IMG/VR virus record: IMGVR_UViG_3300044957_000763
Coordinates: 414,841 to 478,840 of that record
Length of the DNA stretch: 64,000 nt
Direction: 5' to 3' (one strand)
Part shown: positions 25,450-51,384 of the stretch, piece by piece
How positions within the stretch are numbered: the first letter of the stretch is position 1
Layout: every line of letters begins with the position of its first letter
The notes under the pieces: model-generated
What the model was told of the DNA's origin: nothing
Databases searched by the model: none
What the model saw: the letters and a program-made list of their open reading frames with translations, nothing else
Translations under genes and position numbers: made by a program

Positions 25450-26652
25450 ATGAGTGAGTTTGCTCGATATCTGGATGCTGAGCTAAATCGCTTTTTGTCA
25501 CGAGAAGCGCAATTTGGTGGTCGAGGAGGCCATCCACAACCATGGATGACAGGTTTTGGTGTTGGCTCGCTTGGTCACGAGCGCCGCACAGGACCCGGCG
25601 GCCAGAATAATTTTGCGCCAAATATGAGTCTTGATAGTATCATGGGTCGAACTCGTCGCAATCTTGATGATGCAGATATTCCAGATATTAATATGGAAAG
25701 GTGGTTAGAAGGCTCACACAGTGACGTTGAGAGCGATAGAAGAGGATATGACCTAAGTCCAGAAGAAAGACAAATGCAGAACACTCGTGAGAAAATGCGT
25801 CGCAGAGAAATGTTCTTGGACTCAGAAAGAAATCCAGAAAAGCCAGTTGATGTTCCAAAGAAATTCAAAGACGGCAGCAATAAAGAACAGCATCAAACAC
25901 TTGAGTCTACGCTTGAGCACAGACATGAAAATGACGGCAAGGAATACAGTGACCAGGCTTCGCCACAAATACAGCCCACACGCACATTTGGTTATGCAAG
26001 CACGTATCAACGTATGCTGAGGCTTGCAACCAAGTCGATATTTGACCAAAACAAAAACTCCCGCGAAGTAAAACGCACACATACCAGTACAGAGGCTACG
26101 CCGGTTATCACATCAAACGAAGAAGCTGACCCAATGAGTGCAGAAGAAGTGTCTAAAAAGATGCCTGCGCTTGGCAAAATGACTACCACATTAAACCCAG
26201 GGGGGATTCCAACATCTAGGTCTGATTTTGAAAGGGCCATAGATGAATTAGCACTAGATGACGCTGGAAAATCAGACTTGGGTATGCATAATGAGGGCAA
26301 TACATGGGGTGAGCGAACTCTGACATTTGACTTGCCGGCGGCAGATGAAGTTGGCGACCATTCTGGTAGCAAGATTCTGCACAAAGACATGCTTGTTGAT
26401 ATGGATAGTGATTTGGATGCATTTCTTTCTAAAGAACCAGATGAATCAGCCACAACACTAGAGGAACAGCTTGAAAAAACGCGGCCGAAACGCAAGTTTA
26501 GATTGCAAGACACAGACCAGGTTGACGGTTTCAGTGAGACAGAAGCAAAGCACTTAACAGACCCCAATTTCCCACATGTTCCTTGGGGATTATCAGACTA
26601 CTACAACGGTGGTGCGTTTGCTGACCATGGCGTACCACTGCCTAAGATATAG
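25450..26652 (+). CDS. Hypothetical head-associated protein
   Basis: 400 aa, acidic and probably disordered; contains SREAQ, TLESTLEHRH and TLEEQLEKTR motifs shared with other head-region ORFs. Confidence 0.55.
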   Translation: MSEFARYLDAELNRFLSREAQFGGRGGHPQPWMTGFGVGSLGHERRTGPGGQNNFAPNMSLDSIMGRTRRNLDDADIPDINMERWLEGSHSDVESDRRGYDLSPEERQMQNTREKMRRREMFLDSERNPEKPVDVPKKFKDGSNKEQHQTLESTLEHRHENDGKEYSDQASPQIQPTRTFGYASTYQRMLRLATKSIFDQNKNSREVKRTHTSTEATPVITSNEEADPMSAEEVSKKMPALGKMTTTLNPGGIPTSRSDFERAIDELALDDAGKSDLGMHNEGNTWGERTLTFDLPAADEVGDHSGSKILHKDMLVDMDSDLDAFLSKEPDESATTLEEQLEKTRPKRKFRLQDTDQVDGFSETEAKHLTDPNFPHVPWGLSDYYNGGAFADHGVPLPKI

Positions 26653-26671
26653 CGTGTATAACCCGCTATAT
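26647..26671 (+). promoter_or_regulatory. TGTATAA in the loop of a hairpin overlapping the glf start codon
   Basis: atatagcg-tgtataacc-cgctatat; the 3' arm includes the AT of ATG 26670. Confidence 0.5.
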
Positions 26672-27797
26672 GGGACTAAAAAAGTACGACTTTCTAATTG
26701 TTGGTGCCGGACTTTTCGGTGCAACATTTGCAAGACACGCAAAAGACAGTGGCAAAAAGGTTCTCGTTATAGACAAGCGAGAACACATTGCCGGTAATTG
26801 TTACGATGAGAAAAAAGAGGAAGTGTATGTCGGATTGTATGGTCCTCATTTTTTACATTGCCCAGATAAAGAAACCTGGGGGTTTGTCAATCGGTTTAGT
26901 GAATTCAATAATGTCCGAGCCAGACCAAAAGTGAACTATCAAGGGCAAATTTACAGTTTCCCAATCAATTTGATGACATTTAGTCAAGTATGGGGTGTCA
27001 CAACACCGGCAGAAGCCAGGGCGAAGATTGAGGAAGAGCGGATTTTAATTGAAAACCCGGCTAATTTTGAGGAGTTTGTGCTTTCTAAAGTGGGTCGGCA
27101 AATCTACGAAATGTTCTTTGAGGGATATACAACAAAGCAATGGGGCAGACATCCGTCAGAACTACCGGCGTCTATTGCGAAAAGAATCCCAATTAGATTC
27201 ACCTATGATGATAACTACTTTCCAGACAGTCATGTCTACCAGGGAATTCCAACACAAGGATATACTAATATGTTCAAAAATATGCTAGACGGAATTGAAG
27301 TTGAACTAGGTGTTGATTATATTTCTAACAGAAAATCATTAAGTAAAATAGCCAAGCAAGTACTGTATACCGGCCCGCTTGATGCTTTGTATCATTACAG
27401 ATACGGCAAACTTGCATATCGCAGTTTAAGATTTGAAACCGAAAGAGTTAACGGTGATTTTCAAGGAAATAGTGTAATCAATTACACAGACATCAATGTT
27501 CCATACACCAGAATCACCGAATGGAAGCACAAATACAATATGGATTGTGAATATTCATATATCACACGTGAGTATCCGGCTTCTTATGAAGAGACCGGTG
27601 AAGCGTACTACCCAATAAATGACAGCGCAAATAATGCACTACACAAAAAATACCAACAACTAGCCGACGCAGACTTGTTGTTGACTGGCGGAAGAAATGC
27701 TGACTATAAGTACTATGATATGAACATGGTTATTCCGGCCGCCAGCCGGCTTGCGGAAAAAGCCATTGGGGTAGGTAAGCGCAGCTTAAGTGTGTAA
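26670..27797 (+). CDS. glf: UDP-galactopyranose mutase
   Basis: LIVGAGLFG FAD motif, HIAGNCYD, YGPHFLH, YTTKQWG, RIPIRFTYDDNYF, YQGIP, YRSLRFE, YTRITEWKH, YYPIND, GRNADYKYYDM. Confidence 0.95.
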   Translation: MGLKKYDFLIVGAGLFGATFARHAKDSGKKVLVIDKREHIAGNCYDEKKEEVYVGLYGPHFLHCPDKETWGFVNRFSEFNNVRARPKVNYQGQIYSFPINLMTFSQVWGVTTPAEARAKIEEERILIENPANFEEFVLSKVGRQIYEMFFEGYTTKQWGRHPSELPASIAKRIPIRFTYDDNYFPDSHVYQGIPTQGYTNMFKNMLDGIEVELGVDYISNRKSLSKIAKQVLYTGPLDALYHYRYGKLAYRSLRFETERVNGDFQGNSVINYTDINVPYTRITEWKHKYNMDCEYSYITREYPASYEETGEAYYPINDSANNALHKKYQQLADADLLLTGGRNADYKYYDMNMVIPAASRLAEKAIGVGKRSLSV

Positions 27798-27800
27798 AGA
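27772..27800 (+). promoter_or_regulatory. Putative phage promoter TAGGTA-N17-TAAAGA
   Basis: Upstream of 27801; predicted +1 falls on the in-frame GTG 27807. Confidence 0.5.
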
Positions 27801-28349: not shown

Positions 28350-28371
28350 TGTGGAAACTTTCAAAAAATCG

Positions 28372-28400
28372 TAGGTGTTGTAAACACAAATTCCTAAAGG
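28372..28400 (+). promoter_or_regulatory. Putative phage promoter TAGGTG-N17-TAAAGG
   Basis: Intergenic, upstream of 28430; shares AATCGTAGGTGT with 25408-25419. Confidence 0.65.
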
Positions 28401-28429
28401 CATAGCAACACCTAGCGAGGTAAAACATT

Positions 28430-28951: not shown

Positions 28952-28952
28952 C

Positions 28953-29726: not shown

Positions 29727-29727
29727 C

Positions 29728-32700
29728 GTGAATATTAAGAATCTGCTTGGTAAGTTAAGCATTGGTCGTGCTGGGGTATCCACCAGCACAGGTAACATTG
29801 TGCGCACAGGTGCGCCAGAAGATGCATTTCGTTCTGGTGCTTATGAGTTTATTCGCAAAGCACAAACTGAATCCGTTGAACCCACAAAATCCAATATTGC
29901 CAAAAAGCGCATGACACATCCGGTTGTACTTGTGTCTCGATTCAAATACCCATATGTCAAAACCAAGAAAGTACCAGGCGCTGAAGAGGGCGACAAAGAT
30001 ACCAGAGTTGAAACTGGAGAAATTGGCTGGAAGACGACCGTAAACAAAGATGTTGCAGATGAAGCAGTTAATCAATTGTATGCATATGAATTGTATCTGT
30101 ATCATGACACACAAACTGGTCAAGACCTAATTATTGGACAACCAATTGAAGAATATCTTGCAAAATCACAAGCCAAGAGTCAGCAACCAGCGTTTGACTT
30201 AAATGCACCAAGTACTCCAATGGAAGAGCCTGAGTGGCGCACAGAACAAAAAGCAAAGGCAAAGGCAAAGGCAAAGCGTGCAAATAAAGCAGATATTGAT
30301 GCACTAATGCGAAGATTCTCTGCTGGAGAAGCTGCAGAAATGGATATTCCAACTGGAGATTTTTCACAAGATAGAGAAAATGAGCCAGAAAGATACCAAT
30401 TCAAAGGCAAGATTACAAGGTTTACTACACAGCCCAATGACCCAGAGGGTCAAGCTGCTAAACTGGGTGCCAAAGTCGTGCCAGCTTCTGAATTTGGTTA
30501 TCGCGCATATGAAGTAATGCCAAGTCCGGTCGCGGGCGATTTATACACAGAGCCAAACGGCGAAGATGAATCAAAAATACCAACTTGGACAAAGGGTATT
30601 CATATACCAACTGAAGAGTCTCCGTCCGCATATGGGACAAGTTTCAGATATCGGTTCTCTAATGGCGAACCGGTCCCAACACTTAACGGTGCGAAACACG
30701 TGTTGTCTGAGTTATTAAGTGTTAATGGAGAGAAGGCCGCGAAAGACCCAGGTATGAATGCAGATTTCAATATTTATGAATTCATGACTGCAAACAATCT
30801 TTGGGACCAAATGGATAATTCCGGCCGCTTGCCAGAAGGCACAAAAGCCCAAATTGATAATACCGAAGCACAAATTGAATCAATACCAGAGCTAGAACAC
30901 TTCACGCTTGGCGGCGGCTCGCTGGTAAATCTTGGTGGCAAGAAAGATTCTATTATGTCAGAAGAGAATCTTTTGGCAAGAGCACTGTGGCGATTGACGA
31001 ATCCATCTGTTTTCACTTACATCAACAATGATGGAACCGCTGCATTTAGCCCCAAGAACCCAGATGACAAAAACATTAGTCCATTGGTTGCGCTCGACAA
31101 GCAACTCCATGCTGCGCGTCAGGCGTATGTTGAACTGTTTGATTCACTTAGTCCGGCAGAAAGAAAGGTAAGTCCAGAGCTTATTGAGGCGGCAGACAAG
31201 GCCAACAAACTTGGTATCAAGTTTGTTGACACAATGGCAGCCAAATACCCGTCTAAGTTGCGCGAATTTGTACTTAAACAACCATTTGTGGGTCACGCGC
31301 CCGCTGGTCGATATGGCAAACCTGGTGAAAAAGTAGAGAGCGAATATGCGCTCAGCACTACATCACACTTATCAGACAATGGTCGAACTATTGCTACATA
31401 TGAATCAGGTGGCGGACTTCAAAAACTGAATGACGATGACAGAAAGCTGTATGCTCTTGTCAAGGCATTTGAGCGCAATGCAGACACTGCATTAAACAAT
31501 CAGGCAAGAACGCTCCATAGTCAACATCATGCCAAGTTGGAAGATTTTACATCTAAAGACGATAAATCATACAAAATTCCCACACCAAGGTCGGCTGACG
31601 GAGAGTGGTCTGAACCAGCCGGTAAGTCTATTGACTTTATTGAGCAACACTGGCTTGCAAATCACTTGTTAAGTACGGAAGACAAAAATGCAATTTCAGA
31701 ACTTCGGAAAAGCCTAGCTGCTACAGGTAAGAAATATACCTGGGGACAGGCAGCAATGGCGTATCTCAAAAATCAAGACAGATTAAAAGTAAAGAAATAC
31801 ACACAAGGTGCTGGTATGTTGGGTTCAACAGACCACTTCTTGTCGCAAGGACCTTTTACGTTTGAGATTCCTTCGTCCAATGAAGACGAAGGCGAAAATG
31901 AGCTCATAACACTAAACAGGTTTACACCACAGTCTGAAACCGCAGAAAAACTCAAGCATGAAGTGCTCAAACAGCATTTGTTTAATAAACAAGAAGTAGA
32001 ACTTGCAGAGTATTTGGCCGGTAGAGTGCCGTTTGAAAATGAAGACGATGCGCTATTTTCAATTTGGGCCAACTGGTTAATAAAGGCCAAACGCACTGAG
32101 TCAGCCAATAGGGCTGAAAAAGCTCTTGCCGCTCAAGAAGCCAAAGAAAAGTCTAAATCAGAAAATGCCAGGGGTAAACCAAGTGGCTGGCCTTATGCTT
32201 TGACATCTCAAAAATTTAGCGATGAAGAGCGCGAACAATTTGCTGGCAATCTAGAAGATTTTGTCAATACGATTAAAAACCAAGCCGGTGCGGTAATAGA
32301 CCACCATCGAAAAATGGTCTATATCAACCCAGATGGTTCTCAAGTTGAGTTGCCAAGTGCCTTGCCAGTGCAACTACCGGAAGGCGCAAGAGTTCCAATG
32401 CCAGTAAGTATGCTGAAGAGAATCAAGGACGATGATGTATTGGCACAATATGGTTTTGTGAGAATTAAAAACGCTCTATACAGTGCTGTAAACAGCCAGC
32501 CTGTAACAATGCAAGATGGCGTATTGGCTATTGGCGATGAATTGGTTCCTGTTGAATCACTGAACAATATGACGCCTAGCGACATTGTCAAAAACTACAA
32601 TATTTTCATGCGAGATGGTAAGTACTATCACGTATCTGAAAAAAATAGGGTGAGCAGTCCTGTTGTAGAGGTTATTGCACGCGGTGGTGAAAAAATTTCA

Positions 32701-37634: not shown

Positions 37635-37659
37635 GCATCCGTGGAGGATACATAGAAAA

Positions 37660-39202: not shown

Positions 39203-39214
39203 GAGGACAGAACA

Positions 39215-40084: not shown

Positions 40085-40086
40085 GA

Positions 40087-41025: not shown

Positions 41026-41027
41026 TC

Positions 41028-42179
41028 ATGAGCAAAGAGCATAAGAAGACTGATAAAGAAAAGGCGCCAAAGAAAACAAACATTGAAGATTTTGTTTGCG
41101 AGATGCTGGAAAGGCTTCACGGCACACTGAAGCAAATGAAAAAATCGGTTGAGCACGAACCGATAGATTTGCCCGATGCGATTGGTCCGGCTACCGATGG
41201 TGTACTCAAGGATATTGCCGATAGCGGGCCTGTGACCAGGGTGCGTAAGCTCATTATCATTCCTGGTGGCGACAAGAGCAAAGTAGAAGAACTCATGGGT
41301 AAATTGATGTCAGCGCGAGAGGCTGATATCAATAACGGATTGCGCACCGTATTTGCTCAGGTGCACAAGGCAAAAACAAGCGGAGAAGTTGCGTATCAAA
41401 TGCACGCCGTTCGCAATCTGGATACCTTGATTAGAGAAGCAAACGGCGATACAAGAGAAGCATTAACCAAAGTGCGAAGCCTGGTGTTGTCGGGAGACCA
41501 AGCACAACTTGACGCTGCTAATTTTAGATTGCGCAATGTATTCGCGTCTATAGTTAGCACAGAACCCAATACTCGACTTGCATACACATCATTGTCGACT
41601 CAATTTGGAGAAGGCTATCAACTATGTCCAAAATCTGTACACCAAATTGGGAAAGCTATTCCTATGGAGATATCTAAGTGTCGCGACAACTGTATAGATT
41701 GTCGTGTTACACGTGATGGTGCAGTAACTTGTGCATATGCAGATTGGCTTAGAAAGTCTGCTGACAATCACGAATTAGTCGAAGCTCGTTTGGAACGAGT
41801 AAAGCACAACCTAAATGGAACAACACTCAATAAAATTGGTGCTCCAGACCCAATTAAGAACTGGGAAGGGCAATTAGAAGAAATTCATGACAGGTACCCA
41901 GAGGTTAAAGAAACATCAATGGAAACTGCACTTGGTGACACAGACAAGGGCCTGTTCGGTCACCAAGGAGAGACCATCAAGCGAATACAAGAACTGCTAG
42001 AATCCAAGAAAGATTCAGGCAAGACTCGAGAAGAATCACTTGAAAATGACCGCACCAATGCAGATTATGATGATGAGACGCTTGAACAGATGCTTGATGA
42101 CGAACGAGAGCCGTTCAACGAGCAAGAGCTCGACATGATGATTGAAGAGCTGCTATCAGACTCAAGAAACAAGGAGTAA
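41028..42179 (+). CDS. Hypothetical head-associated protein with a Cys-rich domain
   Basis: Cys cluster CP..C..C..C...C; C-terminal repeats of ExxLE helices. Confidence 0.6.
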   Translation: MSKEHKKTDKEKAPKKTNIEDFVCEMLERLHGTLKQMKKSVEHEPIDLPDAIGPATDGVLKDIADSGPVTRVRKLIIIPGGDKSKVEELMGKLMSAREADINNGLRTVFAQVHKAKTSGEVAYQMHAVRNLDTLIREANGDTREALTKVRSLVLSGDQAQLDAANFRLRNVFASIVSTEPNTRLAYTSLSTQFGEGYQLCPKSVHQIGKAIPMEISKCRDNCIDCRVTRDGAVTCAYADWLRKSADNHELVEARLERVKHNLNGTTLNKIGAPDPIKNWEGQLEEIHDRYPEVKETSMETALGDTDKGLFGHQGETIKRIQELLESKKDSGKTREESLENDRTNADYDDETLEQMLDDEREPFNEQELDMMIEELLSDSRNKE

Positions 42180-42185
42180 GTAGCA

Positions 42186-42518
42186 GTGTGGTACAAATTC
42201 GCCAACCAATACGGTGAACCAACGCCATTTATTCCAGAACCAACTCGTGAATTGGGTTCTAATGAGCAAGAGGCCTTGGCTGACGACACACCTGCATTAG
42301 ATAAGCGAATCAAAGAGTTAGCAAATCCAAAGAAAGACCCATACCAGCAAACAATTGAAGGTCAGCTTACTTCTTTGCATCACGAGAATAAAAACATGCT
42401 AGACCCTAACGGAGAGGAGCCAGATGCCTTGTGGCGTGGTTGGGGGATTAAGGCGCAAAGTGATGCAACATCGCCAGATAAGAACTGGCCAGCGGCTTTG
42501 AGCAAGGTACAAGTTTAA
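42186..42518 (+). CDS. Small hypothetical head-associated protein
   Basis: AAGGAG RBS, GTG start; N-terminal WYKFAN; TIEGQLTSLH. Confidence 0.55.
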   Translation: MWYKFANQYGEPTPFIPEPTRELGSNEQEALADDTPALDKRIKELANPKKDPYQQTIEGQLTSLHHENKNMLDPNGEEPDALWRGWGIKAQSDATSPDKNWPAALSKVQV

Positions 42519-42539
42519 TCTTGCTGTACAAGTTGTATC

Positions 42540-44939
42540 ATGAGGAAAGACGGACAAAATGCACCGCGCCTACAGAGTGTTATTACTGAAGCTGTAGAAA
42601 GAGTCAGCAACATACAACCGAGAAACACCGTTGGTGCTCGAGAACACCCTACTATTCGCAGTGCTCGCTCATCATCAGATGTAAAGAGAGACATTCGTGC
42701 GAGATATGCATTTGTTAGTGGTAGCCAAAACACCATTACAACAGCGCCTAATTTTTACACTCCGTTCACGACACCAAGTTCTTTTCAGATTCCCACAAAC
42801 AGAATTGAAGAGTATTTGTGGGCGCAATGGTTTTTTGATAATGAACCTGCCGTTGCGGCATCTATTGAGTTTTACACAGACTTTCCGCTTTCTGGTTTCG
42901 AACTAGAATGTGGGAACTCTAAGGTTCTTGAGTTTTATCAGCAAATGGTCAAAGATTTGGATTTTGCCAGATTGCTTCCGTTGATTAGTCAAGAATACCA
43001 TCTTCGCGGCGATGTATTTGTTTATGCCTCTCTTGATTGCGAGCATTGCGGAGGAACAGGCGTCGACCAAGACACTCATGAGCCTTGCGAACACCTAGGT
43101 GCTAAATGGAAAAGCATCACGCTGCTAAACCCCACACAGGTAGAACTTAGTCCATCAATGATGGACATGCAACCAATTTACTATTACATGCCAGACGAAG
43201 GCATGAAAAAGGTTGTTCAAGAAAGAAAGCCAATTGCAACATACAAGTCAATTCCAGATGCAATTAAGGCTTATATCATGAAAAATGAGCCAATTCCGCT
43301 AGACCCAGTGTGTATCCACCACTTTAAGAGAGGTGCGGCGCCTTGGCAACCATTCGGCCGAAGTATGGTACGAAGGCTTTTTCCCACGCTTGTATACAAG
43401 GATAAGTTACGACAAGCACAGTATTTGGTTGCAGAAAGGCATATTTTACCATTCAAGATTGCCAAGTTAGGCAATGACGACCGACCAGCCAGCGAACAAG
43501 ACCTTCAAATGATTGCGGAAGAAATCGCTAATGTCGCAAACGACCCTTTGATGACAATGATTGCACCGCATACATTTGAAATTGATTATGTTGGCGCAAG
43601 TGGAAAAGTACTACAACTCACAAACGAATTCGAACTTATCAACCAAGATATTTTCGATGGATTCATGCTTAACAAAGCATTGCTCAACGGAGAAGGTCCT
43701 TCCTATGCCAATGCACAAGTTGGTCTGCTTAGTATGGGCCAGCGCCTCAATAAATTGCGCGGAGAAATCGCGCACTGGATTGAAGAAAATCTATTCAAAC
43801 CAGTTGCTGAATGGAATGGATTTGAGGTTGATAATAAGCGTGGTGGAACTAAGTTGGTTTACCCAACAGTGAAATGGGATGATTTGCAATTGCGTGATAA
43901 CACCAATCTGCTGCAAATTGCCATGCAAGCGCGACAAGCCGGAGACCTTTCCTCACAGACAATGCTCGGACTCATGGATATCAACTACGACCAAGAAATT
44001 GAAAGACTACGTATGGAAAACAGCTATGCCGTATCTACGTCTCCAATGTTGCCTGCTGGCGAAATGGGCAATGGATATCGTGGACCAATGGGTGGCGGAA
44101 TGCCGCCGATGGGTGGCGGAATGCCACCAATGGGTGGCGGAATGCCACCAATGGGTGGTGGAATGCCGCCAATGGACGGAGGAATGGGCATGCCGCCAGC
44201 ACCTGGCGGCATGCCACCGATGCCAATGGCTTCAAATAATACCCCAGAAGAAAACTATCGAGAAGCCGTGTCGTTTACCAACGCAGTACATGACAGTGTG
44301 CGCACAAGTTTCTACAATCACACACGTCAGGTTTATGCCAGCAAGTACAAATCTGAAGCACATCGGAACTTTGTTGAATCACAGTGTCCAATTGATGGAA
44401 CTGGATTCCGGGGTGTATTGGCCTCAGAAATGAGTCCATTGATTGACCCGCTAGATGATTATGGACAATATCATGGCGGAGATGAGTCTGTTCCTATGAA
44501 CCCGCTTGCAATGCAAGAACGGCAAAGTGATGTGTCAAACGGTTGGGTTCGCGAAGCAAGAAAGCCATCAAAAGATGAGGACATCAGACCAAGTCCATAT
44601 CAGAAGTTTACAAGTTGGGAAAACAAACTGTACGGAATTGTTCTGAGCATTAACCCTCCATTGCCATTCTATGCACAATACGCGGCAGGGCCTGATGACC
44701 AGTACAGGCTCGATGGTGCGTTCCCTGATATTCAACTGGGTGTTGAGGCAGATAGTGAAACCTATCATTCAACTCCAGAATATATTGAAAGAGACCGTTA
44801 CCGGGATTCACAACTAGCGGCCCAAGGATGGACTTTGTTGCGATTTACAGAAAATGAACTTAAAGAAAGACCGGACGAGGTCCAGACGTTGATTATGCGT
44901 ACAATCCAACATCTAATCAAACGCAAACTCGGGAACTAA
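42540..44939 (+). CDS. Portal protein with a Pro/Met/Gly linker and C-terminal DUF559-like nuclease-fold domain
   Basis: WFFDNEPAVAASIEFYTDFP, PFGRSMVRRLF, AERHILP.KIAKLG, WIEENLFKPVAE, VKWDDLQL portal-type pattern directly before the protease; C-terminal YRLDGAF...VEADSETYH...RDSQLAAQGWTLLRFTE. Confidence 0.75.
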   Translation: MRKDGQNAPRLQSVITEAVERVSNIQPRNTVGAREHPTIRSARSSSDVKRDIRARYAFVSGSQNTITTAPNFYTPFTTPSSFQIPTNRIEEYLWAQWFFDNEPAVAASIEFYTDFPLSGFELECGNSKVLEFYQQMVKDLDFARLLPLISQEYHLRGDVFVYASLDCEHCGGTGVDQDTHEPCEHLGAKWKSITLLNPTQVELSPSMMDMQPIYYYMPDEGMKKVVQERKPIATYKSIPDAIKAYIMKNEPIPLDPVCIHHFKRGAAPWQPFGRSMVRRLFPTLVYKDKLRQAQYLVAERHILPFKIAKLGNDDRPASEQDLQMIAEEIANVANDPLMTMIAPHTFEIDYVGASGKVLQLTNEFELINQDIFDGFMLNKALLNGEGPSYANAQVGLLSMGQRLNKLRGEIAHWIEENLFKPVAEWNGFEVDNKRGGTKLVYPTVKWDDLQLRDNTNLLQIAMQARQAGDLSSQTMLGLMDINYDQEIERLRMENSYAVSTSPMLPAGEMGNGYRGPMGGGMPPMGGGMPPMGGGMPPMGGGMPPMDGGMGMPPAPGGMPPMPMASNNTPEENYREAVSFTNAVHDSVRTSFYNHTRQVYASKYKSEAHRNFVESQCPIDGTGFRGVLASEMSPLIDPLDDYGQYHGGDESVPMNPLAMQERQSDVSNGWVREARKPSKDEDIRPSPYQKFTSWENKLYGIVLSINPPLPFYAQYAAGPDDQYRLDGAFPDIQLGVEADSETYHSTPEYIERDRYRDSQLAAQGWTLLRFTENELKERPDEVQTLIMRTIQHLIKRKLGN
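44085..44186 (+). repeat. 21-bp coding tandem repeat (PMGGGMP)n in the portal gene
   Basis: About 4.5 near-identical units of ccaatgggtggcggaatgccN. Confidence 0.9.
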
Positions 44940-44940
44940 T

Positions 44941-44972
44941 AAATTGGCGACAGAAGTCGCCAATTTCATTTA
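44941..44972 (+). terminator. Terminator-like hairpin after the portal gene
   Basis: aaattggcgac-agaa-gtcgccaattt followed by cattta. Confidence 0.7.
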
Positions 44973-45069
44973 TTCCAGACGATTTTTTGAAAACAAGTAG
45001 GTCTAAGGGCAAACATTGCCGAACGCACATATAGACGTTAACTTTTCAAAAAGTTGTTTTGGAGCGAGC

Positions 45070-48000
45070 ATGTTACGAAAGGGTATATCAGGAAACCTAA
45101 TTGGGCGCAATCAAATAGAGTTCATTGACCCGGCCGAAGCTCGGCGGGTCATCATTGCTGCCAAAAATGGCAAACAAAGCCTATATGCAGACCCAGCAGA
45201 TGTGCTCAATCGAGACGTTGAAGGCGATTTTGATTTATTGAAAGAAATGAATGACCGCCAGGGATACAATCTCTTGTGGGTCAGATGTCGTGCTATTGAC
45301 GCTGATACGATTAATGCCAATGGTGATTATTTCTCAGCAGAAGAGCTTCTTAAAGAAGTCATTCACCATGGAAAAAAGGTTCCGGCTTATAAAACCTTTG
45401 AAGGTTGTCCAATCCACACTAATCACGATAACAAAGACATCACCAAGGCTAAAGGCGAGGTCGTATATGCAGAGTGGGATGATAAAAACCAGTGCGTGTG
45501 GTGCACGTTCTATATATCAGAAGACGCATACCCAGAAATTGCCAATGGTATTCGCATTGGTATGATGAGCGATGTCTCAATGGGATGTACTGTTGAGAGC
45601 GGCTTGTGTTCTGTTTGTGGAAAAGAGGCCGTTCGTGTTGATGACTACTGCGAACACCTTAAAAAATACAAAGGCAAGAAATTGCCTGGTGCGAACAGTA
45701 AGGTGTATGAAAAAAACAAGGGTATCAAGTTCATTGAACTGTCTCTGGTTAATGATGGTGCATTTGACAGTTGTGCAATTAGCGAACTCTATGACCAAGA
45801 CGAACTAACTCAAAAAGCACTTGAATTCAACCGAAGAGTTGCTGAGATTCGAAATCATGTTTTGACAGCGGGTCACCTTACTGCTGAAATGACGCCTTCT
45901 GTGCGCAATGCATATGAGGGCATGCTAAGAACTGTTGTGAGCACAACCACAACTGCTGTTAGAGTGGCGCAGACCCAAGTAGACAATCCACAGTTACTTG
46001 CAACTAATGGTGCAAATGCCAATTCTACCGTTGCTGGAATTTTGAAGGCACTTGGAATGGACGCAAGACAACAACTTAACGTGCTTGACTTGCTAAATGT
46101 TGCGCTTAACTTCCTTGAAGTCGCAATTATGCAGATGTTCACTCGCAAAGATAATGTTGATTTACAACACGTATCAAAGATTGCCAAAGCTATGTCTGAC
46201 CTTCAAGGAACCATGCAAGACTTAATTGACGATGGTGTTGATTCACCAGTAGGTGCCATTGCCGGTACTGGTGGTGCTGCAGGAACATTGCTAAATCCAG
46301 GCGGCGGACAAACAGGACAAACCTCTGTAGCACAGGCACCAGGCCAAGCACAAGCACCCGTACAACCATATAATCCGGCAGAAGGCGGAGTCGGACAAAT
46401 GATGTCACCTGTTCAAGTAAGTGAAAGGTCATTTACTACTGAAAAACCACTCAACCCATTATTAGGCGAAAGCAATAGACGCCAATTGGTATGGGCAAAC
46501 AAAGATAGTTCAGAGGAGCGAGAAGTATACGCATCGCGCAAATCTAGAGCCAATAACATAGAACGATTTGGTCAAAGCCTATTAGCTTTGGCTGAAAGCG
46601 TTGGGGCTGGCCCACTGGCGGCACCAATGTCTACACGTGCCGCTAATAACGAGCAACCAGTGAGAAGTACTAAAACAGTGCAAAATAACGGAGACACAAC
46701 CAAGATGAAAAACCCATTCCAGAGAATCGCAAGTAAATTGCGTGAAAGGAAGCCACTCGAGGTCTCATTCTCAGCAGAGGCTCACAGTCCTGATACAAAC
46801 CACAGAATTGTAGTTTCAACGAAAGGAGACATCGAAGGCTACTATATGAACCGGCTTGCCAATTGGCAACCGCAACTCAACGACCACCTTATTAGTGCAA
46901 TCGAGCAAGAGAACCTTGATTATGCGCTTCCTGTTTTAATGGAAGACTTTCAAAATCATGTTCGAAACGCACAGACTAAAAACATTGACATTTGGTCAGA
47001 TATTGACCTTGAACCAGAGGGTGAAAAGGATGTCAAGGAAAATGCACTTGAGGGTGAACGACACCCGGTAAAGGGCGATGGTGAAATCATTGACAGCTAT
47101 GTCAAGACAAAGCGAACAAACCCTGCTGGTGACACAACCATAGAGGACGAACTTGAAGCCAAAAGAACAGGCACGGATTCTAAGGCTAAAGAAGAGTTGC
47201 TCGAAAATGCTGGTCTGTATGCACGTCGAGATAATGGTCAGGAAGTACATGACTTCCTGGTTGACGATGCACGTTGTGGATGCCCTGACGAACATATTGA
47301 AGAGAGGCTCAAGGGTCGACACGGTCGCAATGACAAGGTGGAAACACGCAAACTTGCAAGCAATATCGCCACCGAACTCGGCCGCGCTGCTTATGCTGCT
47401 CGTGTGACACCAGAAGAGATTATCGAAGTCTCTACAAAAATTGCACAACGAGAAGACCTTGAGGAACTTATCGCTCTGGCATCTCTGGGTACAGATACCA
47501 GAGAGCGAACTGCACAAAGACACGCTTTCTTTAACAACTCATCTGTAATGTTGGGTGCTGAAAATGCTATCTATCACGGTCTTGGCAAAATCGTCAGCGA
47601 TGACATTAAAGCCGGTGACGTTGTAGACGGTCTTCGTGCTGTAATTAGCGAGCGAGAACTTGCTGGAAAATTGATTACTCGAATTGCAAAAACAATGGTT
47701 GAGAATGCACCAACAACTTATGCTGATGTTGTGGTTAAAGCATCTCGCGAAGAACAACTGCGAACTGCTTTGAATTCTCTTGCAGATGGCGAGACTGAAA
47801 CCAGTCGGGGTCATCTCAAGGCTGTGCTTTGCGCTCTAGCAGGAGCTGCAGATGAGTGCCAAGCCGCGCCTGAAGAGGTTATCAATGTAATTGCATCACG
47901 CAATTCTGGTGAAATCTTCGAAACACTCGGCATGTACAACAGCGCAAGTGCACGAGAGGCCAGAAATACTCTTAGACAAAGAGAAGAGTTCTATGGCAAG

Positions 48001-49302
48001 CGAATGGCATCTAAGAAAGATGTCGAGCACACCGTGTTCGGCTGGATGTCAGATTTTGTCCACGATGGTCAAATCGACAGCTACGCGCTTGCCGAAGCGG
48101 CAAGCCTTCTCGGAGCTCGACCTGTTGCTGCGACTAATTTACTTGGTCGACTGCTCGAACGCCAGGCGGCAATTTCGGTTACAGATGAAAAGTGCACAAC
48201 CAAGAGACTGACAGCAACTGTTAGTGACTTTGAAGACCTAGACCCCAAGTCAAATGACTTCGACCAACAGTTTAGAATGCGTGCAATGGACATCTTCCGA
48301 CAAGCTGGTTACGATGTTGACGATGGCACATTCAACCTAACTAGTTTGAGTGTTGACCAGTCTGGAAACATTCAAGCTGAAGTCTCCGCACGACTCACCA
48401 AGACATTCTGTGTCGAAGGAAGTAAAGTTGGCGCGGGCATGGATGCGGTAAACGAACTTCCAGTTGAAGCCACACTTGCAGAAAACACACCAATGGAAGA
48501 TGAATCTGGAAATCTCTACACTGTTTCGGCCATGGATGTGCTTGGAATGGAGCGAACTGCTCAAGCCGCACCAGGAATGGGTGGCGGAATGGGAATGGGA
48601 ATGCCGCCGGCTGCACCAGCGGGTGGTGGTGTTGACCCGTTGGCCGGGGCTACCGACCCAATGGGCGGAGGCTTTGCTTCAATGACAGTACCTAGTGAAT
48701 CAGGGGCGCCAGGAACTGAACCAGTTACCGACACTGTAAACGCAGACGATATGTCAGAACCGGGCACAAAACAACCATGGGGGACAGTGTGTCCTGTCTG
48801 TGGTTCAAAGGACGTTAGCATTGCTAACGGCGAAGGTGAGTGCCAGAGCTGTGGTACACAATTGAAATTCAAGCTGATGGTCGAGGCCGCTCCGAGCACC
48901 GATGATGCTGGCGGCGGAGACGAGGGTGCCGATGCTGGAGTGGATGACATGGGTGCAATGCCTGGTGGTGACATGGGCGCTGCACCAGCCATGCCTGCGG
49001 CTGGGGCACCAACAGACCCAATGATGATGCAAGCAAGTTGGACAAGTTCGCCGCTGGTATGGCAACGATTTGCTGCGGCTGGTCAAGGCGTTTCTGAAAA
49101 AGAAGCAACCAAAGCCAGACAAGCAATGAAACAATTACCAGTCGGACATGTTTGCCCTGGCTGTGGCGACCGTGAACAAATCGAGAAGATTCGAAATAAG
49201 ACTATTTGTACTGCTTGCGGTACGGTGGCTGTTTCCAAGGTTGCGGCAGTAGAAGGACAGCCTAATCTGTTGTCCAATACCATCTACTGGATACTCGAAT
49301 AA
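45070..49302 (+). CDS. Prohead (capsid maturation) protease with a ~1150-aa C-terminal extension
   Basis: N-terminal NANGDYF..EEL, HTNHD (His), VSMGC (Ser), FIELSLV HK97/assemblin-type pattern; C-terminal CPVCG..CQSCG and CPGCG..CTACG zinc ribbons; ATG 45070 with GGAG at 45061. Confidence 0.75.
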   Translation: MLRKGISGNLIGRNQIEFIDPAEARRVIIAAKNGKQSLYADPADVLNRDVEGDFDLLKEMNDRQGYNLLWVRCRAIDADTINANGDYFSAEELLKEVIHHGKKVPAYKTFEGCPIHTNHDNKDITKAKGEVVYAEWDDKNQCVWCTFYISEDAYPEIANGIRIGMMSDVSMGCTVESGLCSVCGKEAVRVDDYCEHLKKYKGKKLPGANSKVYEKNKGIKFIELSLVNDGAFDSCAISELYDQDELTQKALEFNRRVAEIRNHVLTAGHLTAEMTPSVRNAYEGMLRTVVSTTTTAVRVAQTQVDNPQLLATNGANANSTVAGILKALGMDARQQLNVLDLLNVALNFLEVAIMQMFTRKDNVDLQHVSKIAKAMSDLQGTMQDLIDDGVDSPVGAIAGTGGAAGTLLNPGGGQTGQTSVAQAPGQAQAPVQPYNPAEGGVGQMMSPVQVSERSFTTEKPLNPLLGESNRRQLVWANKDSSEEREVYASRKSRANNIERFGQSLLALAESVGAGPLAAPMSTRAANNEQPVRSTKTVQNNGDTTKMKNPFQRIASKLRERKPLEVSFSAEAHSPDTNHRIVVSTKGDIEGYYMNRLANWQPQLNDHLISAIEQENLDYALPVLMEDFQNHVRNAQTKNIDIWSDIDLEPEGEKDVKENALEGERHPVKGDGEIIDSYVKTKRTNPAGDTTIEDELEAKRTGTDSKAKEELLENAGLYARRDNGQEVHDFLVDDARCGCPDEHIEERLKGRHGRNDKVETRKLASNIATELGRAAYAARVTPEEIIEVSTKIAQREDLEELIALASLGTDTRERTAQRHAFFNNSSVMLGAENAIYHGLGKIVSDDIKAGDVVDGLRAVISERELAGKLITRIAKTMVENAPTTYADVVVKASREEQLRTALNSLADGETETSRGHLKAVLCALAGAADECQAAPEEVINVIASRNSGEIFETLGMYNSASAREARNTLRQREEFYGKRMASKKDVEHTVFGWMSDFVHDGQIDSYALAEAASLLGARPVAATNLLGRLLERQAAISVTDEKCTTKRLTATVSDFEDLDPKSNDFDQQFRMRAMDIFRQAGYDVDDGTFNLTSLSVDQSGNIQAEVSARLTKTFCVEGSKVGAGMDAVNELPVEATLAENTPMEDESGNLYTVSAMDVLGMERTAQAAPGMGGGMGMGMPPAAPAGGGVDPLAGATDPMGGGFASMTVPSESGAPGTEPVTDTVNADDMSEPGTKQPWGTVCPVCGSKDVSIANGEGECQSCGTQLKFKLMVEAAPSTDDAGGGDEGADAGVDDMGAMPGGDMGAAPAMPAAGAPTDPMMMQASWTSSPLVWQRFAAAGQGVSEKEATKARQAMKQLPVGHVCPGCGDREQIEKIRNKTICTACGTVAVSKVAAVEGQPNLLSNTIYWILE

Positions 49303-49304
49303 GG

Positions 49305-49395
49305 TTTGCCGCGAACCCATCGCGGCAAATTATTCCCTCTTAAGGGACTTTTTTAAGAATCTCGCTCACTTTCGTAGGTGAGCGAGATTCTTTTT
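49305..49395 (+). terminator. Three consecutive hairpins between protease and scaffold genes
   Basis: tttgccgcga/tcgcggcaaa (49305-49329); tccct/aggga plus T6 (49334-49354); aagaatctcgctcac/gtgagcgagattctt plus T-run (49355-49395). Confidence 0.75.
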
Positions 49396-49403
49396 CATAA
49401 GAA
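49375..49403 (+). promoter_or_regulatory. Putative phage promoter TAGGTG-N17-TAAGAA
   Basis: Overlaps the third terminator hairpin; upstream of the scaffold-decoration-capsid operon. Confidence 0.65.
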
Positions 49404-49473
49404 GCCAGATAGACGAAGTGTTGGCAAAAGCCGATACCCCACCCAAATCATAAATTAGGGAGCAAATCTGACT

Positions 49474-51384
49474 ATGGCTACAACAAAACAAGAAGGAGGA
49501 CTGGACGCACGCACCAAAGCGGTTCGCTTGGCAATGCTACAGGAATCCGACGCGGACGATTTTCGACAATGCGTTCGTGAAGTGCAAGCCAGCACAGGAC
49601 TTTCCGCAGCGGAAGCTCGGATTGTTGCTGGAGCACTTAGAAGTGAAATGCTTCCCAAAGTTGCTGAATCTCTCGGACTAGAGGAGGATGACATTGCAGA
49701 TTTTGCAAACAAACTTCCAGACGAAGAAGATGATGTAGACGGGGAGCAACCGACCACAGATTTCGCTGACGACAAGGTTGAAGACGAAGATGACTTCGTT
49801 GAAGAACCACAAGATGATACAGCCGCCATTCGAGGGGATGCTCTCGATATGGGTGGTGAAGACGCCATCGAAGACGACATGAGCGATGAAGACGACTTGG
49901 GTACAGAACAGACCCTTGAGATTCAGGTGCCTACGGGCAAGGTAGACGAGATTCAAGAAGCGATTCGTTCGATTCTTGGAGACGATGCTTTTGGCCTTGG
50001 CGGAGATTCTGAATTCAATTTCGAAGATGACGAAGAGGGAGATTTTGGAGATGAAAATTTCGAAGATAAACCTTGGGGAGACGACGACGATTTGAATTTA
50101 GAAGATGAAAACATTGGGGAAGAAGCCCCGAACATAGGAAAACAGGTGATTAGCATGTCCAACAAGCAAAAGGCTGGCCGTGAAGTCAGGGCTGCTGATG
50201 AGCAGGTGAAACCAAAAGACCGAGGTCTTGGAAGTGACACTAGCCACGGAGGCAAACCTTTCCAATATGCGGCAGATGCCCAATATCAGGGTGAAGACAC
50301 ACGACCTGGCATGACTCTTGAGGACAGTGCCGGCAATTCACTCCGCGACCAAAACCCGACTTTCGCAGATGCGACAGTCCCCGCCAAAAACCCCGAGAGA
50401 CTTCAGTTGAAGAATTCGTACAAAACCTTCACATACGAAGGTGCCGATGGTGACATCGAGTACGACATGAGCAGCGAAGTTTTCGAAGTCCCCTCTGCTG
50501 GCGAAAAAGCCGGCGGCGAATTTGAAGTTCCGACTCAAATGACCAGTACTCTTGACCGCAAGACTACTGTGGCCACTTTGAACAGTAACGTCGAAAGAGT
50601 AGCTGGGGAAAAAGCAACCGACGACAGTGATTATGTCACTGCAAACAACGAAGAGCTTTATGTTACTTCTGACAATCGCACCGTAGGTCGCGATGAATTC
50701 GAAGAGCATGTCATTGACACCTTGGTGGCAAGTGGCATGACTGAGAAAGAAGTACTTGCAATGTCATTCGCAGAAGGGCTCGAGCTATACGGCAATATTG
50801 TCGAACAGCGCACTGCTGCAAGCAATGCAATGGGAGAAATTACCCGCGCACATGCCGAAAGGCAGGCTCGTATCAACAAACTGGCAGCCGACCTTACGGT
50901 CGAGATTACTGGTGGAACTGAAGAGCCAGATGGTACAGAAGAGACACTTGAGGAAGCCCTTAAGGAATCTCGAGAGGCCATGAGAGACACATTCATCCGC
51001 GAGGCTGAATTGTTCAAAAAGCGCGTTAAAGCCGCTTATGGCGTAACTACTCGACTCGTAATCGCTGGAATTATCAACGATAACGAGGTCGACAATCACG
51101 TAGACACTTGGCTCAAGGACAACCTGAGCGTGGGTGCCATGCTTAAGCAAGGCAACTTCATGCTGAGGGCTGCGTCCAAGACGACCGACCGAACCGTACA
51201 AAGTGGCAACAGTGGCAACACTCGAACTGCTGGAGTATCGGTAAACCCTGCCCTTGTAACACCGAATCTCGGTAGCACACAGGAGGTTAAGGACCGTCTC
51301 GCCAATCTTTTCACTGTTGGTGGTATCCCACGTAATGCATTTGATGCTTACAAAGATAACGACAACAACAGCAGGGACTTTTAA
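49474..51384 (+). CDS. Putative capsid scaffold protein
   Basis: 636 aa, very acidic, coiled-coil C-terminal third; between the protease and the decoration/capsid genes. Confidence 0.6.
   Translation: MATTKQEGGLDARTKAVRLAMLQESDADDFRQCVREVQASTGLSAAEARIVAGALRSEMLPKVAESLGLEEDDIADFANKLPDEEDDVDGEQPTTDFADDKVEDEDDFVEEPQDDTAAIRGDALDMGGEDAIEDDMSDEDDLGTEQTLEIQVPTGKVDEIQEAIRSILGDDAFGLGGDSEFNFEDDEEGDFGDENFEDKPWGDDDDLNLEDENIGEEAPNIGKQVISMSNKQKAGREVRAADEQVKPKDRGLGSDTSHGGKPFQYAADAQYQGEDTRPGMTLEDSAGNSLRDQNPTFADATVPAKNPERLQLKNSYKTFTYEGADGDIEYDMSSEVFEVPSAGEKAGGEFEVPTQMTSTLDRKTTVATLNSNVERVAGEKATDDSDYVTANNEELYVTSDNRTVGRDEFEEHVIDTLVASGMTEKEVLAMSFAEGLELYGNIVEQRTAASNAMGEITRAHAERQARINKLAADLTVEITGGTEEPDGTEETLEEALKESREAMRDTFIREAELFKKRVKAAYGVTTRLVIAGIINDNEVDNHVDTWLKDNLSVGAMLKQGNFMLRAASKTTDRTVQSGNSGNTRTAGVSVNPALVTPNLGSTQEVKDRLANLFTVGGIPRNAFDAYKDNDNNSRDF

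What the first reader, a model, noticed from the sequence alone, without database searches (positions are those of the whole stretch)
25897..50973. Repeated T-L-E-x-x-L-E-x-x-R helix in five head proteins: candidate capsid-interior binding peptide
Seen: TLESTLEHRH (~25897) and TLEEQLEKTR (~26455) in the 25450 ORF; WEGQLEEIH, TREESLENDR and TLEQMLDDER in the 41028 ORF; TIEGQLTSLH in the 42186 ORF; four spaced copies in the protease (KENALEGER, TIEDELEAKR, KEELLENAG, HIEERLKGRH, ~47035-47325); TLEEALKESR in the scaffold. Established: HK97-fold shells recruit cargo through short peptides (scaffold C-terminal helices, encapsulin cargo-loading peptides). Inference: this is a multivalent head-loading tag and could be useful for engineering cargo into this small-subunit shell.
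Basis: partly seen in the sequence, partly recalled or inferred. Interest (0 to 1): 0.75.

Follow-up and report, generated by a model that had tools for sequence, protein, structure and literature searches.

The report
Shared helix motif in megaphage head-module proteins
A 10-12-residue helix motif recurs in four otherwise unrelated proteins encoded beside the portal, protease and capsid genes of a 479-kb phage and is conserved across its clade; it is most likely a common docking or processing signal for head assembly, but neither its partner nor its function has been shown.

Summary
All 11 strings sit at the stated coordinates, and I found three more copies. The window is the end of a 478,840-bp phage genome.

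**Specificity.** Across its 602 ORFs, the strict pattern occurs 4 times against 0.1 expected, always in these proteins. A weight matrix built only from distant homologues gives 14 hits against about 2 expected, 11 of them in the five named ORFs. It finds none in 39 other acidic ORFs.

**Conservation.** The copies hold their alignment columns in relatives of 27-40% identity, while the flanking sequence is not conserved. The consensus is (T/V/S/N)-(hydrophobic or K/R)-E-x-x-L-(E/D)-x-x-(R/H)-x-G. AlphaFold2 places a short isolated helix on each copy, inside low-confidence linkers.

**Carriers.** There are four conserved families: the ORFs at 25450, 41028 and 42186, and the 1428-aa protease fusion. 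The putative scaffold copy is kept only in close relatives. Portal and capsid protein have none.

**Function.** It is unproven. A shared prohead-docking helix is the best reading (about 0.5). A protease cleavage signal (x-x-E) is the main rival, and the two could coexist. The one complex prediction allowed gave no answer.

The parts
25690..25719 (+). Motif copy NMERWLEGSH (ORF 25450-26652, aa 81-90).
   Evidence: Among 37 distant homologues in unanchored alignment columns, E3 is kept in 36, L6 in 35 and H10 in 37. PWM score 13.2.
25897..25926 (+). Motif copy TLESTLEHRH (ORF 25450, aa 150-159).
   Evidence: Found. E3 is kept in 34/37, L6 in 35/37 and R/H10 in 35/37.
26455..26484 (+). Motif copy TLEEQLEKTR (ORF 25450, aa 336-345).
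   Evidence: Found. E3 is kept in 31/37 and L6 in 29/37; position 10 is not conserved in the family.
41859..41888 (+). Motif copy NWEGQLEEIH (ORF 41028-42179, aa 278-287).
   Evidence: Found. PWM score 15.4. AF2 helix 279-289 in a low-pLDDT tail. Conserved in homologues.
42024..42053 (+). Motif copy TREESLENDR (ORF 41028, aa 333-342).
   Evidence: Found. PWM score 19.6. AF2 helix 334-343.
42078..42107 (+). Motif copy TLEQMLDDER (ORF 41028, aa 351-360).
   Evidence: Found. PWM score 18.8. AF2 helix 349-359.
42138..42167 (+). Motif copy MIEELLSDSR (ORF 41028, aa 371-380).
   Evidence: PWM score 13.3. AF2 helix 365-380. Conserved in homologues.
42351..42380 (+). Motif copy TIEGQLTSLH (ORF 42186-42518, aa 56-65).
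   Evidence: Found. PWM score 13.3. Conserved in the orthologues of L003, L005, L002 and L006.
45163..45795 (+). Prohead-protease domain (aa 50-260) of the 1428-aa fusion protein ORF 45016-49302.
   Evidence: phrog_18299 head maturation protease, E 3.5e-20. 37% identity to phage G gp19, E 1e-35. Invariant H137 and S188 in 64 homologues. AF2 pLDDT 65-89.
47032..47061 (+). Motif unit VKENALEGER (protease fusion, aa 673-682).
   Evidence: Found. The alignment column carries the motif in 61 of 121 family members. AF2 helix 674-680.
47137..47166 (+). Motif unit TIEDELEAKR (aa 708-717).
   Evidence: PWM score 23.0. Conserved column. AF2 helix 709-717.
47185..47226 (+). Variant unit AKEELLENAGLYAR (aa 724-737), the 'GLY' variant.
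   Evidence: G733, L734 and Y735 are invariant in 64 homologues. The same variant occurs in distant ORF 41028 homologues (TREEQLEDGLY). AF2 helix 723-731.
47245..47274 (+). Degenerate unit VHDFLVDDAR (aa 744-753). It is a full motif (VKEALLEDAR-type) in many homologues.
   Evidence: The column at about aa 744 carries the motif in 32 family members. AF2 helix 741-753.
47293..47322 (+). Motif unit HIEERLKGRH (aa 760-769).
   Evidence: The column carries the motif in 74 of 121 family members. AF2 helix 761-768, pLDDT about 75, at the edge of the folded helical domain.
50944..50973 (+). Motif copy TLEEALKESR (putative scaffold ORF 49474-51384, aa 491-500). Lineage-specific.
   Evidence: Found. PWM score 14.2. 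Kept in L003 (67%-identity clade) but absent from the orthologues of L005, L002 and L006.
42540..44939 (+). Portal protein (Mu-like) with a C-terminal DUF559/REase-like domain. No motif copy; a candidate partner.
   Evidence: No PWM hit in it or its orthologues.
52175..53035 (+). Major capsid protein (286 aa). No motif copy; a candidate partner.
   Evidence: phrog_2522, E 7.8e-69. 49% identity to phage G gp27. 0 PWM hits in 120 family members, 34,152 aa.

Best explanation
The motif is a short linear recognition element.

Anatomy (shown):
- It is one amphipathic alpha-helix of about three turns, bounded by an N-cap-like T/S/N/V and often a C-terminal Gly.
- It has a hydrophobic stripe at positions 2, 6 and 9, and next to it a conserved charged stripe of E3, E/D7 and R/H10.
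- It lies in disordered, acidic segments of four protein families in the head-morphogenesis block of a megaphage clade.

Carriers (shown):
- The ORF 25450 family, with three scattered copies.
- The ORF 41028 family, with a C-terminal array of 3-6 units.
- The ORF 42186 family, with one copy.
- The 1428-aa protease fusion, with an array of 4-6 units at a spacing of 16-20 residues, lying between a small beta domain and a helical domain.

Function (inferred): all carriers, the maturation protease included, use this helix to dock onto one conserved component of the assembling prohead, whether shell interior, scaffold core or portal. That would co-assemble them inside the procapsid, and tandem copies would add avidity. 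Processing by the protease at or near the motif may follow.

Status: the motif's existence, specificity, conservation and predicted helicity are shown. Docking, the identity of the partner and any cleavage are inferred.
For: **Specificity and significance.**: 4 against 0.1; 14 against 1.95; Fisher 1.6e-11 for the families not used in training; 0 hits in 39 other acidic ORFs.

**Conservation at fixed columns in distant relatives while flanks drift.**
- Protease family: 1.7 strict motifs per protein against 0.065 expected, at four columns.
- ORF 25450 family: E3 34-36/37, L6 35/37 and R/H10 35-37/37 at two copies, measured without anchoring.
- ORF 41028 family: 53 hits in 20 proteins against 1.14 in shuffles, all in the C-terminal half.

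**Same carriers in syntenic loci of 37-67% identity.**

**Selection at the protein level only.**

**Predicted structure.** AF2 puts short isolated helices exactly on the motif units, within low-pLDDT linkers and tails.

**Periodicity.** The conserved positions are spaced 3, 6, 10 and 2, 6, 9. That is helical periodicity, not the alternation of an extended protease substrate (geometry, inference).

**The protease carries the motif itself.** This fits a common docking site better than enzyme-substrate recognition alone. HK97 protease and the herpesvirus protease and scaffold are targeted in this way (established knowledge).
Against: - No binding partner is identified, and no experiment or model shows an interface.
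- The putative scaffold, and other cargo-like proteins in the genome, do not conservedly carry the motif.
- Phage G keeps a homologous capsid protein and protease, but its head-gene region (the first 30 kb of the record, the only part I scanned) holds no copy.
- The invariant Glu preceded by V/T/I two residues earlier also fits the P3-x-P1(Glu) rule of T4-type and giant-phage prohead proteases (PMC10052503).
- That the carriers are virion or prohead proteins is inferred from gene order only.
Confidence: 0.5

Rival explanations
1. The motif is the recognition and cleavage site of the prohead protease. In this reading the cut falls after the invariant Glu, with P3 = V/T/I/S/N and P1 = E. The arrays would be linkers or propeptides that are chopped into peptides of about 18 residues during maturation. 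This would separate the protease and beta-domain half of the fusion from its C-terminal half and trim the tails of the other carriers. It could coexist with docking, as in the T4 capsid targeting sequence, which both targets and is then cleaved.
For: - Glu is nearly invariant, and a beta-branched or small residue sits two positions before it.
- T4 cleaves after L/I-x-E (my own knowledge), and SPN3US cleaves after A-x-E. SPN3US has several motif-conforming sites within single propeptides, and at least three are shown cleaved in gp53 (PMC10052503).
- The copies lie in accessible, disordered segments between or after folded domains.
- A protease domain with invariant His and Ser is encoded in the same block.
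Against: - The strongest conservation extends to +3 (Leu) and +7 (Arg/His) after the Glu with helical periodicity, and the units are predicted as helices. Herpes-type proteases bind extended substrates.
- The residue after the Glu is usually large or charged (E/K/Q), not small.
- The usual substrates lack it. There is none in the portal or capsid protein, and none conserved in the putative scaffold.
- In phage G, whose protease is 37% identical, the scanned head-gene region shows no such motif.
Confidence: 0.28
2. The units are structural repeats rather than recognition peptides. The arrays in the protease fusion and in ORF 41028 would fold, alone or on oligomerisation, into a helical-hairpin or solenoid spacer. 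The resemblance between families would then reflect a shared or exchanged repeat module.
For: - Spacing is regular at 16-20 residues, with up to six units arranged as three pairs.
- Profile-profile similarity between the protease linker and the ORF 41028 tail is 92.8% probability.
- A weak, non-significant resemblance to a designed helical-repeat protein appeared.
Against: - AF2 gives the arrays low confidence and no compact fold, even with 64 sequences.
- The ORF 25450 family has copies 70 and 186 residues apart, and ORF 42186 has a single copy, so no repeat fold is possible there.
- Block-shuffled controls score almost as high as the real alignment (30-37 against 42). The similarity comes from the units themselves, not from collinear homology.
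Confidence: 0.1
3. It is a chance or compositional effect: E/L/R-rich acidic helical proteins give such strings without selection.
For: The carriers are rich in D+E (14-22%).
Against: - Composition-preserving shuffles give 0.086 hits where 6 are seen.
- There are 0 hits in 39 other acidic ORFs.
- The motif is conserved at fixed columns across more than 100 homologues.
Confidence: 0.01

Closest known systems
T4 capsid targeting sequence (CTS) of the internal proteins IPI-III and Alt (Mullaney and Black 1996; reviewed in PMC3012670), and the P1 DarB N-terminal packaging signal (PMC9024508).
   Same: A short peptide shared by otherwise unrelated proteins directs them into the prohead. It is linked to the maturation protease and can be exploited to load foreign proteins.
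   Different: - The CTS is a single N-terminal copy of about 10 residues that ends in the L/I-x-E cleavage site.
- Here the copies are internal or C-terminal and often tandem (3-6). The Glu is at the start of the conserved stretch.
- The protease itself carries copies.
- No targeting has been shown here.
Prohead-protease cleavage motifs of T4 (L/I-x-E) and of giant phages phiKZ and SPN3US (S/A/G-x-E or A-x-E; PMC10052503).
   Same: An invariant Glu follows a constrained residue two positions upstream. SPN3US propeptides hold several motif-conforming sites each (at least three shown cleaved in gp53), and the genes lie in a head block with a protease.
   Different: - The conservation reaches seven residues past the Glu, with helical periodicity.
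- It is absent from capsid protein and portal.
- The protease is a relative of phage G gp19 and actinophage proteases. It reaches no Pfam family, neither Peptidase_S77 nor S78.
- Cleavage has not been demonstrated.
HK97 protease C-terminal targeting tail, and the herpesvirus scaffold and protease C-terminal amphipathic helix that binds the major capsid protein (own knowledge; see also PMC10275583 and PMC12474303 for context).
   Same: An amphipathic helix or tail recruits the protease and scaffold-like proteins to the inside of an HK97-fold shell, and the protease carries the same signal as its co-assembling partners.
   Different: Those signals are single and strictly C-terminal, and they bind a known site. 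Here the motif is multi-copy, mostly internal, with no known partner, and the putative scaffold mostly lacks it.
Encapsulin cargo-loading peptides (own knowledge).
   Same: A short conserved peptide loads diverse cargo into an HK97-fold shell.
   Different: Those peptides are C-terminal, extended and Gly/Ser/Leu-rich, and they bind a pocket on the P-domain. This motif is a charged helix, and there is no sequence similarity.

Membership tests
T4-type capsid targeting sequence | Shared by otherwise unrelated prohead-internal proteins. | tested here: met
   Four families carry it. Profile-profile comparison finds no similarity between the regions compared beyond the motif units themselves.
T4-type capsid targeting sequence | A single copy at the extreme N-terminus, removed by cleavage at its C-terminal L/I-x-E. 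| tested here: not met
   The copies are internal or C-terminal and often tandem, and the Glu is at motif position 3.
T4-type capsid targeting sequence | Sufficient to load a foreign protein into proheads. | not testable with these tools
   Needs a reporter-fusion co-assembly experiment.
Giant-phage / T4 prohead-protease cleavage motif (P3-x-Glu) | Invariant Glu at P1 with a constrained P3. | tested here: met
   E3 is kept in 31-36 of 37. Position 1 is V/T/N/S/I in most copies.
Giant-phage / T4 prohead-protease cleavage motif (P3-x-Glu) | Present in the canonical substrates (capsid protein, portal, scaffold). | tested here: not met
   0 hits in 120 capsid proteins. None in the portal or its orthologues. 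The scaffold copy occurs only in the closest relatives.
Giant-phage / T4 prohead-protease cleavage motif (P3-x-Glu) | New termini at the motif in mature particles. | not testable with these tools
   No cultured member of the clade and no proteome is available. The scanned head-gene region of phage G lacks the motif.
C-terminal capsid-binding helix of scaffold and protease (herpesvirus / HK97 type) | An amphipathic helix in an otherwise flexible segment. | tested here: met
   AF2 helices coincide with the motif units in low-pLDDT regions. Conserved positions 2/6/9 and 3/7/10 form helix faces.
C-terminal capsid-binding helix of scaffold and protease (herpesvirus / HK97 type) | Located at the extreme C-terminus of both scaffold and protease. 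| tested here: not met
   In the protease fusion the units are at aa 673-769 of 1428. The scaffold lacks a conserved copy. Only ORF 41028 has them at its C-terminal end.
C-terminal capsid-binding helix of scaffold and protease (herpesvirus / HK97 type) | Binds the inner surface of the major capsid protein. | not testable with these tools
   Needs pull-down, co-assembly or cryo-EM.
Encapsulin cargo-loading peptide | A C-terminal, extended, Gly/Ser/Leu-rich consensus. | tested here: not met
   The consensus here is a charged helix, (T/V)-x-E-x-x-L-E-x-x-R.

The most novel reading that the evidence does not exclude
The motif would be the address label of a previously undescribed head-loading system of a widespread megaphage clade, one with a phage-G-like small-subunit shell. 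In this reading, tandem arrays of up to six helices act as multivalent clamps on a symmetric receptor such as a capsid hexamer or the portal ring. They would bring in the protease fusion and at least three internal proteins. A single ~18-residue unit, or the ~100-residue array, would then work as a portable tag for packing foreign proteins into very large capsids.
Probability: 0.25. Interest if true: 0.75.

Novelty: new variant of a known kind. Interest (0 to 1): 0.55.

Why it matters
Megaphages of 400-500 kb are almost all uncultured, and how their very large heads are built is unknown. Phage G, whose capsid protein is homologous, has a T=52 shell (my own recollection of the published structure; I did not check it here).

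A short, conserved motif shared by the protease and three neighbouring proteins gives a concrete, testable handle on that assembly pathway:
- It predicts which proteins enter the prohead.
- It defines the residues to mutate: E3, L6 and R/H10.
- If docking is confirmed, it offers a small tag for loading cargo into a very large protein shell.
- If it turns out to be the cleavage signal instead, it defines the specificity of a large, uncharacterised branch of prohead proteases (more than 180 full-length homologues).

Tried and rejected
**Complex prediction.** I ran one job with capsid protein, protease domain (aa 45-262) and motif linker (aa 660-775). It returned 'no answer' (score 0.00, controls not run). 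It is neither support nor evidence against binding.

**Fold and family searches that led nowhere.**
- Foldseek of the protease-fusion model against PDB: nothing below E 0.07.
- Foldseek (viral library) and VIA-align (PDB) of the ORF 41028 model: only generic four-helix-bundle matches, Z of 10.8 or less, below the level that means anything for helical bundles.
- ESM Atlas look-ups of ORFs 41028 and 25450: no usable hit.
- PDB profile search with the protease-fusion alignment: nothing significant.
- Pfam on the protease domain alone: no family.

**Searches for relatives.**
- Megablast against phage records and a peptide-pattern scan of viral contigs found no close relative.
- Cultured relatives do not carry the motif in the regions I scanned. 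These were the first 30 kb of phage G (its head genes) and about 18.5 kb around the protease gene of Rhodococcus phage E3 and of Gordonia phage Stormageddon. Their proteomics therefore cannot settle cleavage.

**Ideas considered and dropped.**
- Bacteroidetes-type O-glycosylation sequon D-(S/T)-(A/I/L/M/T/V): position 0 is not consistently Asp and position 1 is often Val.
- EF-hand-like loop between units: the spacing does not fit.
- Whole-cassette homology between the protease linker and the ORF 41028 tail: the HHalign probability is 92.8%, but block-shuffled controls reach 63-87%.
- Extra carriers elsewhere in the genome: the 131-aa ORF at genome 215,904-216,299, the 230-aa ORF at 112,375-113,067, and TerL aa 124. 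These three hits are at chance level, and two of them, judged by eye from the sequence, look like parts of folded domains.

The gene between the putative scaffold and the capsid protein (51317-52150) shows no sequence similarity to phage G decoration protein gp26.

Full report
**Where the window lies.** The window is bases 414,841-478,840 of a 478,840-bp virus record with direct terminal repeats. The standard genetic code fits: 94% of the genome is coding in 602 ORFs.

**Gene map of the region.** All genes here are on the + strand.
- Large terminase with a LAGLIDADG insert, 22290-25409.
- ORF 25450-26652: 400 aa, no family hit.
- UDP-galactopyranose mutase, 26670-27797.
- A 2502-aa ORF, then a DUF192 protein.
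- Three unannotated ORFs, at 37660, 39215 and 40087.
- ORF 41028-42179 (383 aa) and ORF 42186-42518 (110 aa).
- A Mu-like portal with a C-terminal DUF559/REase-like domain, 42540-44939.
- A 1428-aa protein whose aa 60-257 match head-maturation proteases, 45016-49302.
- An acidic 636-aa protein in the scaffold position, 49474-51384.
- A 286-aa major capsid protein, 52175-53035, which matches phrog_2522 and is 49% identical to Bacillus phage G gp27.

The protease domain is 37% identical to phage G gp19. It has invariant H137 and S188 in 64 homologues.

**The observation.** The strict pattern T[LI]E..L[ED]..[RH] occurs 4 times in the whole proteome against 0.1 expected from shuffles. The looser T[LI]E..L...[RH] occurs 7 times against 0.5, with 6 of the 7 in the named ORFs.

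To avoid circularity, I built a 16-column weight matrix only from homologues of the protease fusion and of ORF 25450, leaving out the query and its closest kin. The training sequences are 27-41% identical to the query.
- In the phage's own proteome it gives 14 hits at 12 or more, against 1.95 expected. Eleven lie in the five ORFs.
- For the three ORFs whose families played no part in training, there are 6 hits in 1,129 aa against 3 in 147,262 aa (Fisher 1.6e-11). Shuffles of those three proteins give 0.086.
- Thirty-nine other ORFs with at least 17% Asp+Glu have none.

The copies are only 46% identical on average at the DNA level and use different synonymous codons. They are kept by selection on the protein, not by recent duplication.

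**Conservation in relatives.**
- The 1428-aa protein has more than 180 full-length homologues in metagenomes, most at 36-41% identity. In 121 aligned members, [VTI].E..L...[RH] occurs 1.7 times per protein against 0.065 expected. It is concentrated at four alignment columns equivalent to query aa 673, 708, 744 and 760.
- The ORF 25450 family has 41 representatives. Two copies keep E3 in 34-36 of 37 sequences, L6 in 35 of 37 and R/H10 in 35-37 of 37, in columns read without anchoring. The surrounding sequence is poorly alignable. A third copy is weaker.
- The ORF 41028 family is independent of the matrix. It has 53 hits in 20 proteins against 1.14 in shuffles, all in the C-terminal half.
- Four syntenic loci of 37-67% identity (L002, L006, L005, L003) carry the motif in the same orthologues: ORF 25450, 41028 (3-4 copies), 42186 (1 copy) and the protease fusion (3-4 copies). 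It never appears in the portal, the capsid protein, the gene before the capsid protein, or the three ORFs upstream of ORF 41028.
- The copy in the putative scaffold is kept only in the closest locus, L003. It is absent from the aligned position in the others.
- 120 capsid-protein homologues (34,152 aa) have no hit.

**Anatomy.** The family-wide consensus is (D/E)-(V/T/S/N)-(L/I/M or K/R)-E-x-(Q/L/R)-L-(E/D/S)-x-(V/F/K/L)-(R/H)-x-G.
- Positions 2, 6 and 9 are hydrophobic, and positions 3, 7 and 10 are charged. Both sets have i, i+4, i+7 spacing. They form two adjacent stripes on one helix, with a cap-like residue before it and often a glycine after it.
- AlphaFold2 of aa 1-1200 of the protease fusion (64-sequence alignment) gives:
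  - a protease domain at 50-260 and long helices at 261-405;
  - a disordered stretch at 409-583 and a small beta domain at 586-655;
  - a low-confidence linker in which short isolated helices fall on the units (674-680, 709-717, 723-731, 741-753, 761-768);
  - then a confident helical domain from 777.
- AlphaFold2 of ORF 41028 gives a helical bundle at 80-175, a Cys-rich module at 197-245 and a low-confidence tail. Helices in the tail again coincide with the units (279-289, 334-343, 349-359, 365-380).
- In the protease family the units form arrays of mostly 4-5 recognisable copies, and up to 6-7. The dominant spacing is 16-18 residues. In the best-preserved members they appear as three pairs.
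- A variant, E-x-x-L-E-x-x-G-L-Y-x-R, has an invariant G-L-Y in the protease family. It also occurs in distant ORF 41028 homologues.
- The linker and the ORF 41028 tail resemble each other in profile-profile comparison (92.8% probability). Block-shuffled controls score nearly as well, so this reflects the shared units rather than proven collinear homology.

**Interpretation.** These are the hallmarks of a short linear motif that folds on binding and is read by one conserved partner. I favour a docking role, at a confidence of about 0.5, for these reasons:
- The conserved residues follow helical rather than extended periodicity.
- The units are predicted as helices.
- The protease itself carries them, as HK97 protease and the herpesvirus protease and scaffold carry their capsid-binding tails.
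- The classical protease substrates here do not carry the motif.

The partner is unknown. Capsid interior, scaffold, portal and the helical domain of the fusion are all open. The main rival, at about 0.28, is a prohead-protease recognition site with cleavage after the invariant Glu. This follows the P3-x-Glu rule known from T4 and from SPN3US (A-x-E, with several motif-conforming sites in one propeptide; PMC10052503). The two readings could coexist, as in the T4 capsid targeting sequence, which both targets and is cleaved (PMC3012670, PMC9024508). A purely structural repeat is unlikely, because ORF 25450 has widely spaced copies and ORF 42186 has one. A chance origin is excluded.

**Limits.**
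- The carriers are called head proteins only because of gene order. No family, fold or atlas search identified them.
- Phage G shares the capsid protein and protease, but its head-gene region, the only part I scanned, lacks the motif. The two actinophages with related proteases also lack it in the regions scanned. No existing virion proteome can therefore decide between docking and cleavage.
- The tools returned no model coordinates, so I could not inspect what unit 5 packs against.

**Comparison and novelty.** I found no description of this motif or of this protease-fusion family in the papers searched. In concept it belongs with capsid-targeting and maturation signals (T4 CTS, P1 DarB signal, HK97 and herpesvirus tails, encapsulin peptides). 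It fails the defining positional and sequence features of each one. I file it as a new variant of a known kind, with its function still to be shown.

Noticed in passing
window 22290-25409: The large terminase (1039 aa) carries a LAGLIDADG homing-endonuclease or intein-like insert (Pfam LAGLIDADG_3 and Hom_end, aa 431-506). Several ~1800-aa homologues of the protease fusion (P0015, P0025, P0030, P0035, P0041) also carry LAGLIDADG_3.
   Followed up: no
window 42540-44939: The portal protein has a C-terminal DUF559/MTES_1575 restriction-endonuclease-like domain (aa 721-789). The fusion is conserved in most syntenic relatives, but no such hit is on record for the portal-position gene of the P0028 contig.
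   Followed up: partly
window 26670-27797: A UDP-galactopyranose mutase gene (Pfam GLF, E 1.6e-68) sits inside the head-morphogenesis block, next to ORF 25450. Relatives carry sugar-modification genes just downstream of the capsid gene (L002, L006).
   Followed up: no
window 29728-37236: A 2502-aa ORF of unknown function lies between the terminase and portal blocks. In L002 and L006 the ORF 25450 homologue lies much closer to the portal, with no giant gene in the 10 kb between them.
   Followed up: no
window 55969-63274: Three tandem ORFs of similar length and composition (812, 817 and 804 aa), Thr-rich (about 14%) and poor in Glu and Lys, so probably paralogues. Two of them have a weak tail-fibre PHROG match.
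   Followed up: no
L003 (GCA_018268375.1, contig JAFDWS010000002.1, 131,007-155,239): A syntenic head module, 67% identical in the protease fusion, lies in a 1.36-Mb contig of a MAG labelled Armatimonadetes. An IS605 OrfB/TnpB gene sits next to the capsid gene. This could be a prophage, an assembly chimera or misbinning; I did not resolve which.
   Followed up: no
window 25450-25530 and 42186-42230; L002, L005, L006 orthologues: A second short shared element, A-Q-(F/Y)-G-G, lies near the N-terminus of both the ORF 25450 family and the ORF 42186 family (which begins MWYK...AQFGG). ORF 42186 may be a short paralogue of the N-terminal part of ORF 25450.
   Followed up: partly
window 41600-41770 (ORF 41028 aa 183-254): A strongly conserved Cys-rich module (invariant C200, C222 and C235, nearly invariant C218, within RLAYTSLSTQ..EGYQLCPK...SKCRDNCID...CAYADW). 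It is possibly metal-binding and has no known family.
   Followed up: no
L005 8026-9924; the P0028 contig: In some relatives a reverse-strand gene is inserted between the portal and the protease fusion: an NAD synthase in L005 and an SNF2 helicase in the P0028 contig. This breaks an otherwise strictly conserved gene order.
   Followed up: no
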